The notes below the pieces were generated by a model that was given only the letters and a program-made list of their open reading frames with translations, was not told the DNA's origin and ran no database searches. A DNA stretch of 63,625 nt, counting the filler, from Octopus bimaculoides (Eukaryota), in NCBI RefSeq assembly GCF_001194135.2. It is 6 parts of 6 records of this genome, joined end to end, with 100 filler letters (N's around TTAATTAATTAA, not from the genome) between each part and the next. Parts side by side here need not be neighbours in the genome. Positions count along the whole stretch, not along the records: positions 54,899 to 62,395 come from NC_068996.1; 5 more parts are not named here. One strand, written 5' to 3'. A program made the translations under genes and the position numbers. Positions 54,899 through 62,495 of this stretch are shown here, piece after piece. Each line of letters begins with the position of its first letter. The first letter of the stretch is position 1.

Positions 54899-55269
54899 AA
54901 ATATTATATTTCTAATTTTGCTGATCAGTGAATAAACTTCACTATGATTTATATAAGTTTGCGAAGGCGAAACGGGCTTCTCTATCCAGTTGGCAAGCTA
55001 CTTCAGGCTGATGACGAGCAAAGACTCAGAAACATGTCCCTGAATGCTGGCTAGGCTGGGTGGAGGAGCTTGTCTCCCCCTCGCAAACTTAAGGACACAG
55101 TAATTGTGTCAAGGCCGACAGGAAGCGGTCCAGCTTCCCAGGGCTAAACGGCAGTAGTGTGTTCCCTTATTGGGATTGTCACATTAAGTTGACAATATAC
55201 TACAACTTTATCGCTCCACTACTGCTTAAATCTCTCTGAGAGATTTAGAAATATTATATTTCTAATTTT
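54899..55269 (+). mobile_element. Candidate retrozyme monomer: 350-nt structured unit with terminal direct repeat and an HHR
   Basis: AAATATTATATTTCTAATTTT at 54899 and 55249 (period 350), HHR at 55002-55044, long rod 54955-55090 and several further hairpins. Confidence 0.7.
55002..55044 (+). ncRNA. Type I hammerhead ribozyme, intact core
   Basis: TTCAGG-CTGATGA-C-GAG-CAAAGA-CTC-A-GAAAC-AT-GTC|CCTGAA: 6-bp stem I, palindromic stem III ACATGT, predicted cleavage after C55038. Confidence 0.88.
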
Positions 55270-55507
55270 TTTTATACGTTATCTACAAAGTATGCAACTT
55301 ACTAAAAACTAAGTGACACGTGACAGCCACTACGCATAGTCTTTATGTAACGTTACACAACGATTGCAGTAAAATATATACCTAACTTGCATGAAAGTCA
55401 TTGATAGTTGCTTTACAGAGAGAAAAGAGGTGGGGAAATGGTTAAGTTTCTTTTTATCATTTCAGGTCAGTGATTCTCGATGACTTTATAATTTACTGAA
55501 AATCAAA

Positions 55508-55585
<78 letters not shown>

Positions 55586-56371: not shown

Positions 56372-58129
56372 GTAAATATCTTGGCAATAATGTGAATCAT
56401 AAACCTCTCGGTTGGTTGTCTAACAGATCATCCATGCACTTATCACCTTTGATGTGGTAGGTACACCATCTAACTTAATACCACCTTCATCACCACTACC
56501 TGCACCACCACCTTCACCACCACTGTCACCCCCCCCCTGGTCTTTGGATGTTTTAGTGCAGTTAACTATGTCGCAACCATTTGAACCAAGTCCTCTACTC
56601 TGCTCCCCACCACTTCCCCCACTCAGTCCTAGCTTTTCTTTTGGGTGTTCATTCTGGACAGCAACTTCACCAGAAAAGGATATTGGAAACTATCTCTGCC
56701 CTTATAAAGGAGAGTGAGAAAGAGAAAGAGTGAGAAAGAGAAAGAGTGAGAGAGGAAGGGAAAAGAAAGTAAAGACTAACTTCCTTGTTCAAATTTTGTT
56801 AGCATCAATTCTTTACAGGTCGTCTCTGAAATTAGTTATGGTTAAATTAATAATTTAGGAATAAGGAACTCAGTGGGTGGGGGGAGTTTTTTCAAACAGC
56901 TTGTGCTCAGGAGACAAAACGTGAAATTAATGAAAAATTCTGAATTCTTCAGTTTTACCAGCAGTTTTAACCAGTTATTTTCTATTCTACTACAGATGTA
57001 AGTTTTATGAGTGATTTATTCTAAATATCGGTTCACCGAACATCAGTGTAGGGAAGAACAGTTGTTTTCCATGGATGCAAACAATAATCTATAATGATAT
57101 GTGGTGCGGAAGAATATTCTATTCTATTCCATTGAGTACTGTGATGGTGGCGGTGGTGATGCCAGTGGTAGAAACAACAGCAATGGTGGTGGTGGTGGTG
57201 GTGGGGTTTGCGACAGTGATGGCAAAGGCAATCGTGTGGTAGTAGCAGCAGTGATGTTTGTAGTTGTGCTGCTGCTGCTGCTATTGTTGTTGTTGTTGTT
57301 AGTGGTGGTGGTGGTGGTGGTTTAACAAAACTCTTGTAAATTATGTCTTTGTGTCATCAAATTATAAGAGGAGCTACATCTGTTGTTGTTTTTTAACCCT
57401 AGGTCAGCATTAAGTAAGCATACCTATGATCAAAAATACTCCAGCTTTTGTCCATCACATCTTAAATTTAATTTTTTTTTTTTTGCAGACATCTAGAACT
57501 AGATTATTTAATGTGTCCTTTTACTTTTGTCTTTTTTTGTTGTTTGTTTTTGAAGACAGTGTCATGATTTAAAGCAGATTGTGCTGCTATTTCTAACACA
57601 TGAACATCTAAATAAAGTTACCAACCCTCCTCATTAGCTCATATAAACCATAAAATTGAGGCACTTAACACTTCTCATGATTAACAATGCCATACAATAC
57701 CAAACCAGTTATCCAGCAAGCTTGGGACTAGATGTGTCCCAGATTTCTGGATTTTCCAGTTCTCTGGAGACAGTCTAAATATATACTTAAAATATAAAAT
57801 AAGCTATGAAAAATAAAGAGCTAAATCGTATTTAACAGATTCACATTAATACACTTCTAAGGCAAGGCCTGGTCGATATTTATTAATCCACTTAAAAATT
57901 CTTTAAATATATCATACTTATACCTTGTACACTGTATGTTTATAGGAGGTAAATTACATGAAGAAACATAAAGAACATGTTTTTATTTAACATATACAGA
58001 TACAAATTAATATACAATTCTAAAGCAGAATATGTGTAGTCTTTATCAGTCCTTTTGAAAAGGTAAAGAACAAAAATATCTTTAACACACCAGATGCCAG
58101 TTAACCAAATTCAAAAACAGGTTCTGTTT

Positions 58130-58295
58130 ATTTTGAAGCCATGCTGGAGCACCACCTTATAGTCAAAGAAATTGACCCCAGGACTTTGTAAGCCGATCTT
58201 TTTTACTGAACCGCTAAGTTACAGGGATGTATACACACCAACATTGGTTGCCAAGCGATGGTGGTGGGGACACAGACACAAAGACACGCACATAA

Positions 58296-58332
<37 letters not shown>

Positions 58333-58490
58333 CAATGGGCTTCTTTTCAGTTTCCATCTACCAAATCCATTCACAACACTGTGGTTTGCCTGAGGCTATA
58401 ATAGAAGACACTTGCCCATGGTGCCATGTAGTACAACTGAACCTGGAACCATGTGGTTGAGAAGCAAGCTTCTTACCACACAGCCATGCC
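58130..58490 (-). mobile_element. SINE family A, near full length
   Basis: Reverse complement of the 51925-52315 architecture. Confidence 0.88.
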
Positions 58491-58639
58491 TAAAAGTACT
58501 GCACAGTATTTTCAGATTTCTGGAAACTGGACAAGAGGTCTGTTACTGTATTCTGGTATGAAGATGTCATTGAGGGATTTTATGAAACACCTGAAAATAA
58601 TTGTAGAATGTTAAGAGTTTTTAGATATGATTACAGAGG

Positions 58640-58845: not shown

Positions 58846-59124
58846 CTCTTCACTCAAAATTTCCGTCTTTGTGCCTATAATAGGAAGGATTACTNNNNNN
58901 NNNNNNNNNNNNNNNNNNNNNNNNNNNNNNNNNNNNNNNNNNNNNNNNNNNNNNNNNNNNNNNNNNNNNNNNNNNNNNNNNNNNNNNNNNNNNNNNNNNN
59001 NNNNNNNNNNNNNNNNNNNNNNNNNNNNNNNNNNNNNNNNNNNNNNNNNNNNNNNNNNNNNNNNNNNNNNNNNNNNNNNNNNNNNNNNNNNNNNNNATAT
59101 ATATATATATATATATATAATATA

Positions 59125-59450
59125 GCACATGGCTCAGAGGTTAGAGCATCAAGCTTACGATCTTGAGGTTGTGAGTTCGATTCCTGGACCAGACTGCGTG
59201 TTGTGTTCTTGAGCAAGACACTTTATTTCACGTTGCTCCAGTTCACTCAGCTGTAGAAATGAGTTGCGACGTCACAGGTGCCAAGCTGTATCAGACCCTT
59301 TGCCTTTCCCTTGGATAACATCAGTGGTGTGGAGGGGGGAGGCCCATATGCATGGTCTTCCATAAAAACAATCTTGCCCAGACTTGTGCCTCGGAGGGTA
59401 ACTTTCTAGGTGCAATCCCATGGTCATTCATGGCCAAAGGGGGTCTCCTC
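59125..59450 (+). mobile_element. SINE with family D head but a different 3' body
   Basis: TGGCTCAGAGG..GAGTTCGATTCC + CTTGAGCAAGACACTTTATTTCACGTTGCTCCAG, then unrelated sequence. Confidence 0.8.
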
Positions 59451-60389: not shown

Positions 60390-60570
60390 ACGACAGGCTT
60401 CTTTCAGTTTCCATCAATCAAATCCTCTTACAAAGCTTTGGTTGAGAGTTGGTTAATCCAGGGCTATAGTAGAAGACACTTTGTCCGAGGTCCTAAGATG
60501 CCATGCAGTGGGACAGCCTAAAACCATGTGGTTGGGAAACAAACTTCTTACCACACAAGCATGCCTGCAC
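60390..60570 (-). mobile_element. SINE family A, 5' half
   Basis: CGACAGGCTTCTTTCAGTTTCC..TAGAAGACACT..CTTCTTACCACAC. Confidence 0.75.
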
Positions 60571-60913: not shown

Positions 60914-61142
60914 GGAGGCGCAATCGCCCAGTGGTTAGGGTAGCGGATTCGCAGTCATAGAATCGCGGTTTCGATTCCCAGACCAGGCGTTGTGTGTGTT
61001 TATTGAGCGAAAACACCTAAAGCTCCACGAGGCTCCGGCAGGGGATGGTGGCGAACCCTGCTGTACTCTTTCACCACAACTTTCTCTCACTCTTACTTCC
61101 TGTTTCTGTTGTGCCTGTAATTCAAAGGGTCAGCCTTGTCAC
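60914..61142 (+). mobile_element. SINE family C, running into gap
   Basis: Near-identical to 21158-21385. Confidence 0.9.
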
Positions 61143-62184
61143 NNNNNNNNNNNNNNNNNNNNNNNNNNNNNNNNNNNNNNNNNNNNNNNNNNNNNNNNNN
61201 NNNNNNNNNNNNNNNNNNNNNNNNNNNNNNNNNNNNNNNNNNNNNNNNNNNNNNNNNNNNNNNNNNNNNNNNNNNNNNNNNNNNNNNNNNNNNNNNNNNN
61301 NNNNNNNNNNNNNNNNNNNNNNNNNNNNNNNNNNNNNNNNNNNNNNNNNNNNNNNNNNNNNNNNNNNNNNNNNNNNNNNNNNNNNNNNNNNNNNNNNNNN
61401 NNNNNNNNNNNNNNNNNNNNNNNNNNNNNNNNNNNNNNNNNNNNNNNNNNNNNNNNNNNNNNNNNNNNNNNNNNNNNNNNNNNNNNNNNNNNNNNNNNNN
61501 NNNNNNNNNNNNNNNNNNNNNNNNNNNNNNNNNNNNNNNNNNNNNNNNNNNNNNNNNNNNNNNNNNNNNNNNNNNNNNNNNNNNNNNNNNNNNNNNNNNN
61601 NNNNNNNNNNNNNNNNNNNNNNNNNNNNNNNNNNNNNNNNNNNNNNNNNNNNNNNNNNNNNNNNNNNNNNNNNNNNNNNNNNNNNNNNNNNNNNNAGTAA
61701 GGATAGAAATCGATATTGAAAAAAAAAATGTAGTATTTATAAACCTAGTTGATATTTTCCAAAACCTTGTGTATTTTCCTCAGATTTATTCCAAGCATTA
61801 GTTTTTTTTTTTTTAGTTTTGCTTTTAATCATAAAACAATATCATATACAATAATCAATATATTAGAAAATAACATATTGACATAAGAAATATACATGTA
61901 ATAACATATATATTTGTGTGTGTGTGTGTGCATGTAAGTATCTAATAACTTTCTTTGCTTCCCATTTTTGTTGTTATAAATGTTTTTAATACTCATTTTT
62001 ATTATAACACACACACACACACACATACATGTGCATGCTTGACTATACATGTATTTCTGTGTTCATATGAATGTGTATGTATGTACATATTTGTACGTTT
62101 GTCTCCCTGTATAGGTACACACACACACTTATGCGTATGTGTGCTCCATTTCACTCTCTCTCTCTTTCTCACACACACACACAT

Positions 62185-62335
62185 CACTATCATTTAACAT
62201 CTGTCTTCCCTGCTGGCATGGGTTGGATGATTTGACAGGGTCCAACCTAGAGGACTGCTGTGTTGGGCTCCAAAGTCTATTTTGGCATGTTTTTTTTAAT
62301 GGATGGACAGCCTTCCAAACCCCACTCACTTTACA
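62185..62335 (-). mobile_element. Diverged RTE-type 3' end
   Basis: CATTTAACATCTGTCTTCC..GCATGGGTTGGATGATTTGAC. Confidence 0.65.
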
Positions 62336-62495
62336 AAGTATACCAGGAATATACATACAAATACATACATATATATGTATATGTATATATATATANNNNN
62401 NNNNNNNNNNNNNNNNNNNNNNNNNNNNNNNNNNNNNNNTTAATTAATTAANNNNNNNNNNNNNNNNNNNNNNNNNNNNNNNNNNNNNNNNNNNN

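What the first reader, a model, noticed from the sequence alone, without database searches (positions are those of the whole stretch)
54899..55269. Candidate cephalopod retrozyme: 350-nt terminally redundant, fully structured RNA with an intact hammerhead
Seen in sequence: (1) an intact HHR core with a 6-bp stem I (55002-55044). (2) Stem I continues into a rod: 54972-54991 pairs with 55054-55073 over 20 bp with no mismatch (13 Watson-Crick, 7 G-U), and 54955-54964 pairs perfectly with 55081-55090. The G-U pairs would be A-C mismatches on the other strand, which points to selection on the plus-strand RNA. (3) The rest is also paired: AGTGAA/TTCACT, GACACA/TGTGTC, GGAAGC/GCTTCC, GCAGTAGTG/CACTACTGC, ATTGTCA/TGACAAT, TAAATCTC/GAGATTTA. 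(4) A direct repeat of at least 21 nt lies exactly 350 nt apart, and the repeat region is itself a hairpin (AGAAAT-ATTAT-ATTTCT), so it may be terminal redundancy rather than a target-site duplication. No ORF is present. Established: non-LTR retrozymes are non-coding units of roughly 150-400 nt with a type I HHR that yield circular RNAs (schistosome Sm-alpha, newt satellite 2, cnidarian and bivalve families). Inference: this is a monomer of such a family, possibly undescribed in octopus. It lies antisense to the putative host gene, so it would not cut that pre-mRNA.
Basis: partly seen in the sequence, partly recalled or inferred. Interest (0 to 1): 0.85.

Follow-up and report, generated by a model that had tools for sequence, protein, structure and literature searches.

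The report
Hammerhead-ribozyme retroelement copy (retrozyme-like)
This is a 329-350-base non-coding mobile-element copy that carries a self-cutting hammerhead RNA motif inside a very tightly folded RNA, so it looks like a new example of the known animal "retrozyme" family; this copy has a weakened ribozyme stem, and neither its copy number nor its activity could be tested here.

Summary
The hammerhead (HHR) at 55002-55044 (+) is not a chance motif. A relaxed descriptor expects 0.001 hits per piece. A covariance model built only from four experimentally validated retrozyme HHRs finds exactly this site (21.8 bits, E about 5e-5). It aligns without gaps to the axolotl HHR_Amex1 ribozyme and has the identical GAAACAUGUC helix III.

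The 329-350-nt unit folds far better than shuffles (z -7 to -10) and than any other window of the piece. Its size, G+C content, lack of coding capacity and pairing match validated non-LTR retrozymes.

There are four caveats:
- Helix II has a C·A mismatch where canonical HHRs have G10.1-C11.1.
- Helix III is only 1 bp plus a palindromic loop, so the ribozyme would work as a dimer.
- Rfam gives only a sub-threshold hit.
- Only about 1.06 units with one HHR are visible, and the repeat is cut off by the piece's left edge.

Tandem arrangement, copy number, covariation, circular RNA, host organism and host gene could not be tested, because no related sequence was reachable.

Verdict: a probable solo or array-edge copy of a retrozyme-type element, a new member of a known kind and of moderate interest.

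The parts
54899..54919 (+). Direct repeat, copy 1 (AAATATTATATTTCTAATTTT). It begins on the first base of the piece, so its true left end is unknown.
   Evidence: (D18)
54920..55248 (+). 329-nt core of the element between the two repeat copies. It is non-coding, has 46 % G+C and is highly self-paired.
54923..54949 (+). 5' hairpin (GAUCAGUGAA / UUCAC..UGAUU; contains AGTGAA/TTCACT).
54955..55090 (+). 136-nt rod whose tip is the hammerhead. It includes a 20-bp helix with 7 G·U pairs and a perfect 10-bp helix. The fold is -67.3 kcal/mol on the + strand and -56.9 on the - strand.
   Evidence: (I8)
55002..55044 (+). Type I hammerhead ribozyme. Helix I is UUCAGG/CCUGAA (6 bp). Predicted cleavage is after C17, between 55038 and 55039.
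55008..55014 (+). Core strand C3-A9 (CUGAUGA).
55015..55028 (+). Helix II plus loop 2: C10.1·A11.1 mismatch, 3 bp GAG/CUC, 6-nt loop CAAAGA.
   Evidence: (pair flagged non-standard)
55029..55038 (+). G12 A13 A14, the palindrome ACAUGU (A15.1-U16.1 plus CAUG loop) and C17. The string GAAACAUGUC is identical to axolotl Ax330/HHR_Amex1.
54999..55001 (+). UAC internal loop of helix I (loop 1, opposite U55045), followed by the 3-bp extension AGC/GCU. The layout is the same as in HHR_Amex1 (UGC/U, GGC/GCU).
55094..55110 (+). Hairpin GACACA/TGTGTC.
55113..55145 (+). Hairpin with GGAAGC/GCTTCC and an outer GGCC/GGGC stem.
55150..55226 (+). Branched hairpin: GCAGTAGTG/CACTACTGC stem enclosing CCC/GGG and ATTGTCA/TGACAAT hairpins.
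55227..55247 (+). 3' hairpin TAAATCTC-TCT-GAGATTTA.
55249..55269 (+). Direct repeat, copy 2. With AG 55247-55248 it forms the palindrome AGAAATAT-T-ATATTTCT (55247-55263), which folds as its own hairpin in the circular 350-nt form.
55266..55273 (+). T8 run spanning the end of repeat copy 2 and the flank. It marks the point where the repeat stops (G in copy 1, T in copy 2).

Best explanation
The element is a genomic copy of a hammerhead-bearing, non-autonomous retroelement of the animal 'non-LTR retrozyme' type, the same kind as newt/axolotl satellite 2, Sm-alpha and the mussel and coral retrozymes.

How the family would work (inferred from the known family, not shown here):
1. Read-through transcription of head-to-tail copies gives a multimeric plus-strand RNA.
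2. Two hammerheads pair through their palindromic ACAUGU to make a 6-bp intermolecular helix III (a double hammerhead). Each cuts after C17 (55038|55039), leaving a 5'-OH and a 2',3'-cyclic phosphate.
3. A host RtcB-type tRNA ligase closes the roughly 350-nt monomer into a circle.
4. The circle folds into the rod-and-hairpin structure seen here. A lone hammerhead cannot form helix III in that structure, so the circle is protected from re-cutting.
5. The reverse transcriptase and endonuclease of a Penelope-like element copies the circle into cDNA somewhat longer than one unit and inserts it.

This particular locus shows one unit plus at least 21 nt of overrun (or a target-site duplication), a single hammerhead, and a weakened helix II (C10.1·A11.1). 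On its own it cannot release a unit-length RNA. It is either a dead-end solo copy or the last unit of an array that lies beyond the left edge of the piece.
For: Shown here:
- The HHR core, the 6-bp helix I, the 4-position helix II with a 6-nt loop, and the 1-bp helix III with a palindromic CAUG loop are present at 55002-55044.
- This layout is the 'canonical metazoan type I' layout described in PMC4209133.
- A descriptor scan finds this site only, with 0.001 hits expected per piece.
- A covariance model built only from four experimentally validated retrozyme HHRs hits exactly 55002-55044 on the + strand at 21.8 bits, E 5e-5. The next best match scores 10.8 bits.
- Rfam HH9 aligns end to end at 22.8 bits in a targeted search.
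- The 55-nt domain aligns without gaps to axolotl Ax330 with 34/55 identities. It shares the GAAACAUGUC string, the same 3-nt/1-nt helix I bulge and the same helix II and loop lengths.
- A double-hammerhead fold of two domains is energetically feasible: -24.6 kcal/mol against -23.0 for two monomer MFEs.
- Unit size (329/350 nt), G+C (44-46 %), absence of an ORF, 67 % paired bases and -0.37 kcal/mol per nt fall inside the range of the four validated retrozymes and the published description.
- The plus strand folds about 12 kcal/mol better than the minus strand.
- There are no terminal inverted repeats and no RT or endonuclease remnant nearby.

Inferred: the piece looks like a whole short-read scaffold, because it ends in a TA microsatellite and holds two N runs. 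Its left end falls on the first base of the repeat. That is expected if the sequence to the left is repetitive or the repeat continues there.
Against: - Only one HHR and 1.06 units are visible, and there is no second copy in the other 7.1 kb.
- The G10.1-C11.1 pair, described as highly conserved, is replaced by C·A.
- Rfam finds no hammerhead at its gathering score and none at E<=1 in the whole-piece scan.
- Both strands fold very well (z -7.7 and -6.5), so much of the structure is plain inverted repeat and not proof of RNA-level selection.
- The structure z-score is much stronger than for validated retrozymes (-9 to -10 against -0.9 to -3.6). That could mean a young hairpin-rich repeat of another origin.
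- No related sequence, copy number, covariation, expression or cleavage data could be obtained.
Confidence: 0.6

Rival explanations
1. The element is a fossil. It is the same kind of element, but this copy and perhaps the whole family in this genome is dead. On this view the C·A at the base of helix II is a decay mutation, for example CpG to CpA on an ancestral CUCG, the hammerhead no longer cuts, and the structure is only inherited.
For: The C10.1·A11.1 mismatch sits where G-C is described as highly conserved. There is a single HHR and no neighbouring copy. Two further A·C oppositions in the rod look like transition decay.
Against: Axolotl HHR_Amex2 has a U·U mismatch at the same place and still cleaves, 22 % as a monomer and efficiently as a dimer. 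The rest of the core, helix I, helix III and 117 base pairs are unbroken. The two 21-nt repeat copies are identical.
Confidence: 0.15
2. The element is a piece of the pseudo-LTR of an autonomous Penelope-like element (a 5'-truncated or solo pLTR with its 'tail'). It is not a separate non-autonomous family.
For: PLE pLTRs carry type I HHRs, insert as partial tandems with 30-40-bp tails and give target-site duplications of variable length. Xenopus retrozyme families are sister to PLE pLTRs.
Against: [quoted passage not shown] Here helix I is 6 bp with a defined bulge and helix II has 4 positions, which is the canonical retrozyme layout. No RT or GIY-YIG signal was found in stop-free segments of the piece. 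The unit is bounded by direct repeats 350 nt apart.
Confidence: 0.12
3. It is a chance hammerhead-like string inside an unrelated hairpin-rich repeat, such as a foldback or MITE-like element or a local inverted duplication.
For: Rfam scores are far below gathering. The minus strand also folds strongly. The first-stage scan looked at much more sequence than this piece, so some chance motifs are expected overall.
Against: The chance expectation is 0.001 per piece even with a lax descriptor. An independent CM gives E 5e-5. The colinearity with HHR_Amex1 extends to features not in the descriptor: the loop 1 bulge, the loop 2 length and sequence, and the palindromic helix III. The element ends are not inverted repeats. 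The HHR sits at the tip of the rod with helix I continuing into it, as in published retrozyme circles.
Confidence: 0.05
4. It is an endogenised cDNA copy of an exogenous viroid-like or satellite circular RNA rather than a genome-resident retroelement family.
For: The size, the rod-like fold and a single-polarity hammerhead resemble small infectious circular RNAs.
Against: The HHR is the metazoan type I layout with the amphibian-type helix III. Nothing similar was found in the viral or metagenome collections.
Confidence: 0.03

Closest known systems
Axolotl/newt satellite 2 retrozymes, especially Rtz_331 with HHR_Amex1 (PMC7229834)
   Same: Both have a type I HHR with a 6-bp helix I, a 3-nt/1-nt helix I bulge followed by RGC/GCU, a 4-position helix II with a 6-nt CAAARA loop, and the identical GAAACAUGUC helix III (1 bp plus the palindromic loop CAUG). 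The two align without gaps over 55 nt. Both are units of about 330-350 nt that are non-coding and highly self-paired. The expected behaviour is also the same: poor cleavage as a monomer and efficient cleavage as a dimer.
   Different: There is no similarity outside the ribozyme domain. The candidate has C·A instead of G-C at 10.1/11.1, lower G+C (44 % against 51-58 %) and a much stronger structure z-score. The axolotl units occur in huge tandem arrays, whereas only 1.06 units are visible here.
Axolotl Rtz_353 with HHR_Amex2 (PMC7229834)
   Same: It has a mismatch at the base of helix II (U·U) with 3 bp above it, the same weakening as the C·A here. It has been shown to remain active, especially as a dimer.
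   Different: Its helix III is longer (ACACGUGU), its cleavage-site base is A rather than C, and its loop 2 has 5 nt.
Mussel (Mytilus galloprovincialis) and coral (Acropora millepora) non-LTR retrozymes (PMC7229834)
   Same: They share the element class, size range (224-390 nt), low G+C, circular-RNA-type fold and type I HHR. The mussel shows that the class exists in molluscs.
   Different: Their HHRs have a stable helix III and cleave as monomers. There is no sequence similarity beyond the core. They occur in tandem arrays with thousands of copies.
Minimal hammerheads in pseudo-LTRs of Penelope-like elements (PMC4209133)
   Same: They are type I HHRs with a palindromic or absent helix III that are thought to act as dimers. 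They are linked to the machinery that probably mobilises retrozymes.
   Different: [quoted passage not shown] They sit next to an RT/GIY-YIG ORF. None of this is seen here.
Rfam Hammerhead_HH9 (RF02275), the amniote intronic type I HHR
   Same: It is the best Rfam match, aligned end to end, with the same helix I length and a CAAAAA-type loop 2.
   Different: The score is 22.8 bits against a gathering score of 52. Helix III is deleted relative to the model and the 10.1/11.1 pair is non-standard. HH9 is a conserved single-copy intronic motif, not a repeat unit.

Membership tests
Canonical metazoan type I hammerhead ribozyme | Catalytic core CUGANGA ... GAAA ... UH | tested here: met
   CUGAUGA is at 55008-55014, GAAA at 55029-55032, and U16.1 C17 at 55037-55038.
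Canonical metazoan type I hammerhead ribozyme | Helix I of about 6 bp, open-ended, with an internal loop 1 | tested here: met
   UUCAGG/CCUGAA form 6 Watson-Crick pairs, followed by a UAC/U internal loop and AGC/GCU. The definition is from PMC4209133.
Canonical metazoan type I hammerhead ribozyme | Helix II of 4 bp with the conserved G10.1-C11.1 pair | tested here: not met
   C10.1·A11.1 is a mismatch with 3 bp (GAG/CUC) above it. Both Rfam HH9 and model R1 flag the pair as non-standard. A comparable U·U mismatch in HHR_Amex2 is tolerated.
Canonical metazoan type I hammerhead ribozyme | Short helix III (1-2 bp) capped by a 2-4-nt palindromic loop, which allows a double hammerhead | tested here: met
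   A15.1-U16.1 plus CAUG is present, ACAUGU is a palindrome, and the string is identical to Ax330. The double-hammerhead fold scores -24.6 kcal/mol.
Canonical metazoan type I hammerhead ribozyme | Loop 1 and loop 2 nucleotides that make the tertiary contacts | tested here: inconclusive
   The loop lengths and positions are colinear with HHR_Amex1 and HH9 (UAC/U against UGC/U; CAAAGA against CAAAAA). The individual contacts could not be checked.
Canonical metazoan type I hammerhead ribozyme | Reaches the curated score of an Rfam hammerhead model | tested here: not met
   No hammerhead hit at E<=1 in the whole piece. HH9 scores 22.8 bits against a gathering score of 52 in a 67-nt search. Hammerhead_II scores 14.2 bits.
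Canonical metazoan type I hammerhead ribozyme | Self-cleavage after H17 | not testable with these tools
   This needs in vitro transcription of monomer and dimer constructs.
Non-LTR retrozyme (animal) | Tandem repeat with at least two consecutive units, each with a complete HHR (operational criterion of bioRxiv 10.64898/2026.07.22.740005) | tested here: inconclusive
   Only 1.06 units and one HHR are visible, and no copy lies downstream. The piece starts on the first base of the repeat, so an upstream unit cannot be excluded. The criterion is quoted.
Non-LTR retrozyme (animal) | Unit of about 150-450 nt, G+C below 50 %, no ORF, and no LTR, PBS or PPT | tested here: met
   The unit is 329/350 nt with 46/44 % G+C. 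The longest ORF is 36 aa and there are no long terminal repeats.
Non-LTR retrozyme (animal) | Predicted circular RNA is stable and highly self-paired, with the HHR embedded in the fold | tested here: met
   The circular MFE is -130.7 kcal/mol with 67 % of bases paired. The four validated retrozymes give -0.21 to -0.43 kcal/mol per nt and 66-71 % paired.
Non-LTR retrozyme (animal) | Multi-copy family in the genome, with covarying copies | not testable with these tools
   No sequence of the source organism could be reached.
Non-LTR retrozyme (animal) | Expressed as linear and circular monomer RNA | not testable with these tools
   This needs RNA data or a northern blot/RT-PCR.
Non-LTR retrozyme (animal) | Co-occurrence with Penelope-like elements in the same genome | not testable with these tools
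   There is no PLE signal in this 7.5-kb piece, and the genome is not available.
Penelope-like element pseudo-LTR (min-HHR) | Minimal HHR layout: helix II of 7-8 bp, helix I of 4-5 bp, an unpaired base 5' of helix II, and no defined loop 1 | tested here: not met
   Here helix I is 6 bp with a defined bulge and helix II has 4 positions.
Penelope-like element pseudo-LTR (min-HHR) | Adjacent RT plus GIY-YIG ORF | tested here: not met
   Pfam finds nothing in the stop-free segments of at least 38 aa on both strands of the piece. The upstream side is not visible.

The most novel reading that the evidence does not exclude
The family is a live, viroid-like circular RNA of a cephalopod. Its unusually perfect, G·U-laden rod (23 consecutive pairs, 7 G·U in 20 bp, structure z-score far beyond validated retrozymes) would then record A-to-I editing of the double-stranded RNA that was fixed as A-to-G by reverse transcription. 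The retrozyme copies would be a genomic archive of ADAR activity on a retrotransposing circle.
Probability: 0.07. Interest if true: 0.6.

Novelty: new member of a known kind. Interest (0 to 1): 0.3.

Why it matters
If it is confirmed as a multi-copy, expressed family, it would extend ribozyme-processed circular RNAs (retrozymes) to another animal lineage. No paper in the searchable library reports hammerhead retrozymes in cephalopods. It would also show that the amphibian-type, dimer-dependent helix III (GAAACAUGUC) recurs in a distant lineage. The family would give a natural, very stable 350-nt circular RNA scaffold. In a heavily RNA-editing animal it would be a test case for how double-stranded circular RNAs coexist with ADAR and RNAi. 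In itself it is an expected find: the class is already described as widespread in invertebrates, including molluscs.

Tried and rejected
**Looking for relatives**
- A strict HHR pattern in the metagenome contigs gave 0 hits.
- A looser helix II/loop 2 pattern gave 11 hits. All are one bacterial coding sequence, not ribozymes.
- A loose pattern in the viral contigs gave 7 hits without a helix I, so they are chance matches.

**Protein-index routes**
- A chimera of all stop-free six-frame segments of the element found nothing.
- A chimera of the SINE-like repeat ORFs of the piece, meant to reach contigs of the source organism, also found nothing.
- Exact look-ups of four ORFs of the piece, meant to recover the scaffold's upstream sequence, found none on record.
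- A literature search for the sequence strings gave 0 papers.

**Other checks**
- Rfam on the whole piece gives only microsatellite-driven miRNA-like matches and no hammerhead.
- A second, diverged copy in the piece was sought with blastn at word size 7 and with nhmmer. Neither found one.
- ARAGORN finds no tRNA-like head. By eye there are no convincing A or B boxes in the right order, so the element is not an obvious Pol III SINE.
- A MITE or foldback origin was rejected because the element ends are not inverted repeats and the fold is several local hairpins rather than an end-to-end stem.
- Two Pfam calls failed on stop codons and were replaced.

Full report

Yes. A script confirmed each pairing:
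- 54972-54991 with 55054-55073 gives 20 bp: 13 Watson-Crick, 7 G·U and no mismatch.
- 54955-54964 with 55081-55090 gives 10 perfect bp.
- 55002-55007 with 55039-55044 gives 6 perfect bp.

The 21-nt direct repeat (54899-54919 = 55249-55269) is exact and 350 nt apart (D18). There is no ORF longer than 36 aa and no stop-free stretch longer than 48 aa.

The fold is far beyond chance:
- -140.9 kcal/mol for 54899-55269, z -8.3.
- -131.6 kcal/mol for the 329-nt core, z -7.7.
- -130.7 kcal/mol for a 350-nt circle, with 67 % of bases paired.
- Twenty-six other 329-nt windows of the same piece have mean z -0.8. The strongest, z -4.8, is a microsatellite window.

**2. Is the hammerhead real?**

The motif reads UUCAGG | CUGAUGA | C-GAG-CAAAGA-CUC-A | GAA | A-CAUG-U | C^ | CCUGAA.

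- All core positions are canonical.
- A deliberately lax descriptor allows G·U in helix I, one unpaired layer at the base of helix II, and any helix III of 0-12 nt. It hits only this site in the piece. It hits 3 times in 20 Mb of first-order Markov sequence, which is 0.001 expected per piece.
- Rfam is not convincing on its own. There is no hammerhead at E<=1 in the whole piece. A 67-nt targeted search gives HH9 at 22.8 bits against a gathering score of 52. The alignment is end to end, with helix III deleted and the 10.1/11.1 pair flagged.

For a test that did not depend on my descriptor, I took the four experimentally validated retrozyme constructs printed in the supplement of PMC7229834 (coral Amil224, mussel Mg353, axolotl Ax353 and Ax330). 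I built a covariance model from their hammerheads alone. It finds exactly 55002-55044 on the + strand at 21.8 bits, E about 5e-5 (calibration is rough). The next best match is a partial one at 10.8 bits.

**3. What kind of hammerhead?**

PMC4209133 describes the canonical metazoan type I motif: helix I of 6 bp, helix II of 4 bp, interacting loops, the conserved G10.1-C11.1 pair, and a helix III of 1-2 bp capped by a 2-4-nt palindromic loop. Such a motif cuts poorly alone and well as a dimer.

The candidate fits all of this except the G10.1-C11.1 pair.
- It aligns without gaps to axolotl HHR_Amex1 (Ax330) over 55 nt with 34 identities.
- It shares the GAAACAUGUC string, the same 3-nt/1-nt helix I bulge followed by RGC/GCU, and the same 4+6+4 helix II.
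- ACAUGU is a palindrome. A double-hammerhead fold of two 55-nt domains evaluates to -24.6 kcal/mol. Two active-like monomers give -17.4 and two monomer MFEs give -23.0.

Ax330 cleaves 6 % in an hour as a monomer and efficiently as a dimer.

The deviation is C10.1·A11.1 at the base of helix II. The closest precedent is HHR_Amex2, which has U·U there and still cleaves, 22 % as a monomer and efficiently as a dimer. So the ribozyme is plausibly active only as a dimer and may be impaired. 'Intact' is true of the core but not of helix II.

It does not look like the minimal hammerheads of Penelope-like elements, which have a helix II of 7-8 bp, a helix I of 4-5 bp, and an extra base 5' of helix II.

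**4. The element as a whole**

Size (329 or 350 nt), G+C (46/44 %), lack of coding capacity and the absence of long terminal repeats match the published description of non-LTR retrozymes.

I folded the four validated sequences as circles for comparison. The sequences were taken from PDF text, and two are shorter than their names suggest, so they may be incomplete.

| Measure | Validated retrozymes | Candidate |
|---|---|---|
| kcal/mol per nt | -0.21 to -0.43 | -0.37 |
| Bases paired | 66-71 % | 67 % |
| Plus-over-minus strand advantage | 0-32 kcal/mol | 12 kcal/mol |
| Structure z-score | -0.9 to -3.6 | -9 to -10 |

The candidate's much stronger z-score has no explanation yet.

The whole MFE has 11 G·U against 2 A·C 1x1 mismatches, plus the C·A in helix II, giving two-sided p 0.02-0.06. 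The rod alone has 7 against 3, which is not significant. The minus strand also folds strongly, z -6.5.

**5. The direct repeat and the locus**

Only one hammerhead and 1.06 units are visible. Sensitive searches find no second copy in the remaining 7.1 kb. [quoted passage not shown] Monomer copies are described as non-transposing derivatives.

The piece begins on the very first base of the repeat. It ends in a TA-rich microsatellite and holds two N runs of 202 and 553 nt. It therefore looks like a complete short-read scaffold whose ends are assembly breaks at repeats (inference).

A repeat that merely happened to start on base 1 would be a coincidence. More likely it continues to the left. If it continues by 9 nt or more, it would include the 3' arm of the terminal hairpin TAAATCTC/GAGATTTA. 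It would then be element sequence, that is, a partial tandem or terminal overrun, rather than a target-site duplication.

A small hint points the same way. The AG that ends the core extends the repeat's palindrome to AGAAATAT-T-ATATTTCT.

Both readings fit mobilisation by a Penelope-like element. Those elements give target-site duplications of variable length, partial tandems and 30-40-bp tails. My estimate is about 0.6 for redundancy or tandem edge and 0.3 for target-site duplication.

**6. Surroundings**

- No Pfam domain was found in any stop-free segment of at least 38 aa on either strand, so there is no RT/GIY-YIG remnant and no recognisable host exon.
- No tRNA was found.
- The claims 'octopus' and 'antisense to the host gene' therefore cannot be judged.

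**7. Relatives**

None could be reached: metagenome and viral pattern scans, two protein-index searches, four exact ORF look-ups and a literature string search all failed. Copy number, tandem arrays and covariation remain untested.

**8. Mechanism**

The most likely life cycle is that of known non-LTR retrozymes. This is inferred from those families, not shown here.
1. Multimeric plus-strand transcripts are made.
2. Double-hammerhead cleavage occurs after C17 (55038|55039).
3. A host tRNA ligase closes the monomer into a circle.
4. The circle is stable and self-paired. The lone hammerhead cannot form helix III in it, so the circle is protected from re-cutting.
5. A Penelope-like RT makes cDNA longer than one unit and inserts it.

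The visible locus is either a dead-end solo copy or the last unit of an array.

**9. Novelty and score**

No paper in the searchable library links hammerheads or retrozymes to cephalopods. The class, however, is described as widespread in invertebrates, and a mollusc example has been characterised. This is a new member of a known kind. The interest score is 0.3.

Noticed in passing
window 58345-58491 and 60402-60566; also 59176-59214 and 60970-61008: There are two copies of a dispersed repeat at 81-95 % identity (families D9, D13, D19). There are also two tRNA-T-loop-like segments (TTCGATTCC..., D15), each lying next to an N run. They look like SINE-type interspersed repeats. ARAGORN finds no intact tRNA, and a protein-index search with their ORFs found nothing.
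   Followed up: partly
window 54899 and 62300-62395; N runs 58895-59096 and 61143-61695: The piece starts on the first base of the 21-nt repeat, ends inside a TA/TACA microsatellite and contains two N runs, one of them flanked by (AT)n. This looks like a complete short-read scaffold whose ends and gaps fall in repeats.
   Followed up: partly
window 54920-55269 compared with the validated retrozymes of PMC7229834: The candidate's structure z-score (-9 to -10 as a circle) is much stronger than that of four experimentally validated retrozymes (-0.9 to -3.6). Energy per nucleotide and fraction paired are similar. The long uninterrupted helices (23 consecutive pairs) are unexplained.
   Followed up: partly
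window 55266-55273 and 55500-55583: A T8 run starts inside the end of repeat copy 2, and a perfect (AAT)20 microsatellite preceded by (AAAT)6 lies 230 nt downstream. PLE-type elements are reported to favour microsatellite targets. The relevance here is unknown.
   Followed up: no
window 56480-56530 and 57141-57325: ACC/CAC-rich tracts and GGT/GTG-rich tracts form inverted repeats 630-770 nt apart (I12, I17). They give low-complexity ORFs on both strands, and no Pfam match was found.
   Followed up: no
window 58265-58342, 61909-62144, 62336-62395: The Rfam sub-threshold 'miRNA' matches (mir-3149, mir-297, mir-466, mir-1277) all fall on TG/CA/TA microsatellites and are composition artefacts.
   Followed up: yes
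L008-L013, L015-L018 (metagenome contigs): The string CTGATGAGTCGCAAAGAC(A/T)C(C/T)GAAAC recurs in about ten metagenome contigs. It lies inside a conserved bacterial coding sequence (translated ...LLARLMSRKDTETHVQNDV...) with no helix I, so it resembles a hammerhead by chance only.
   Followed up: yes
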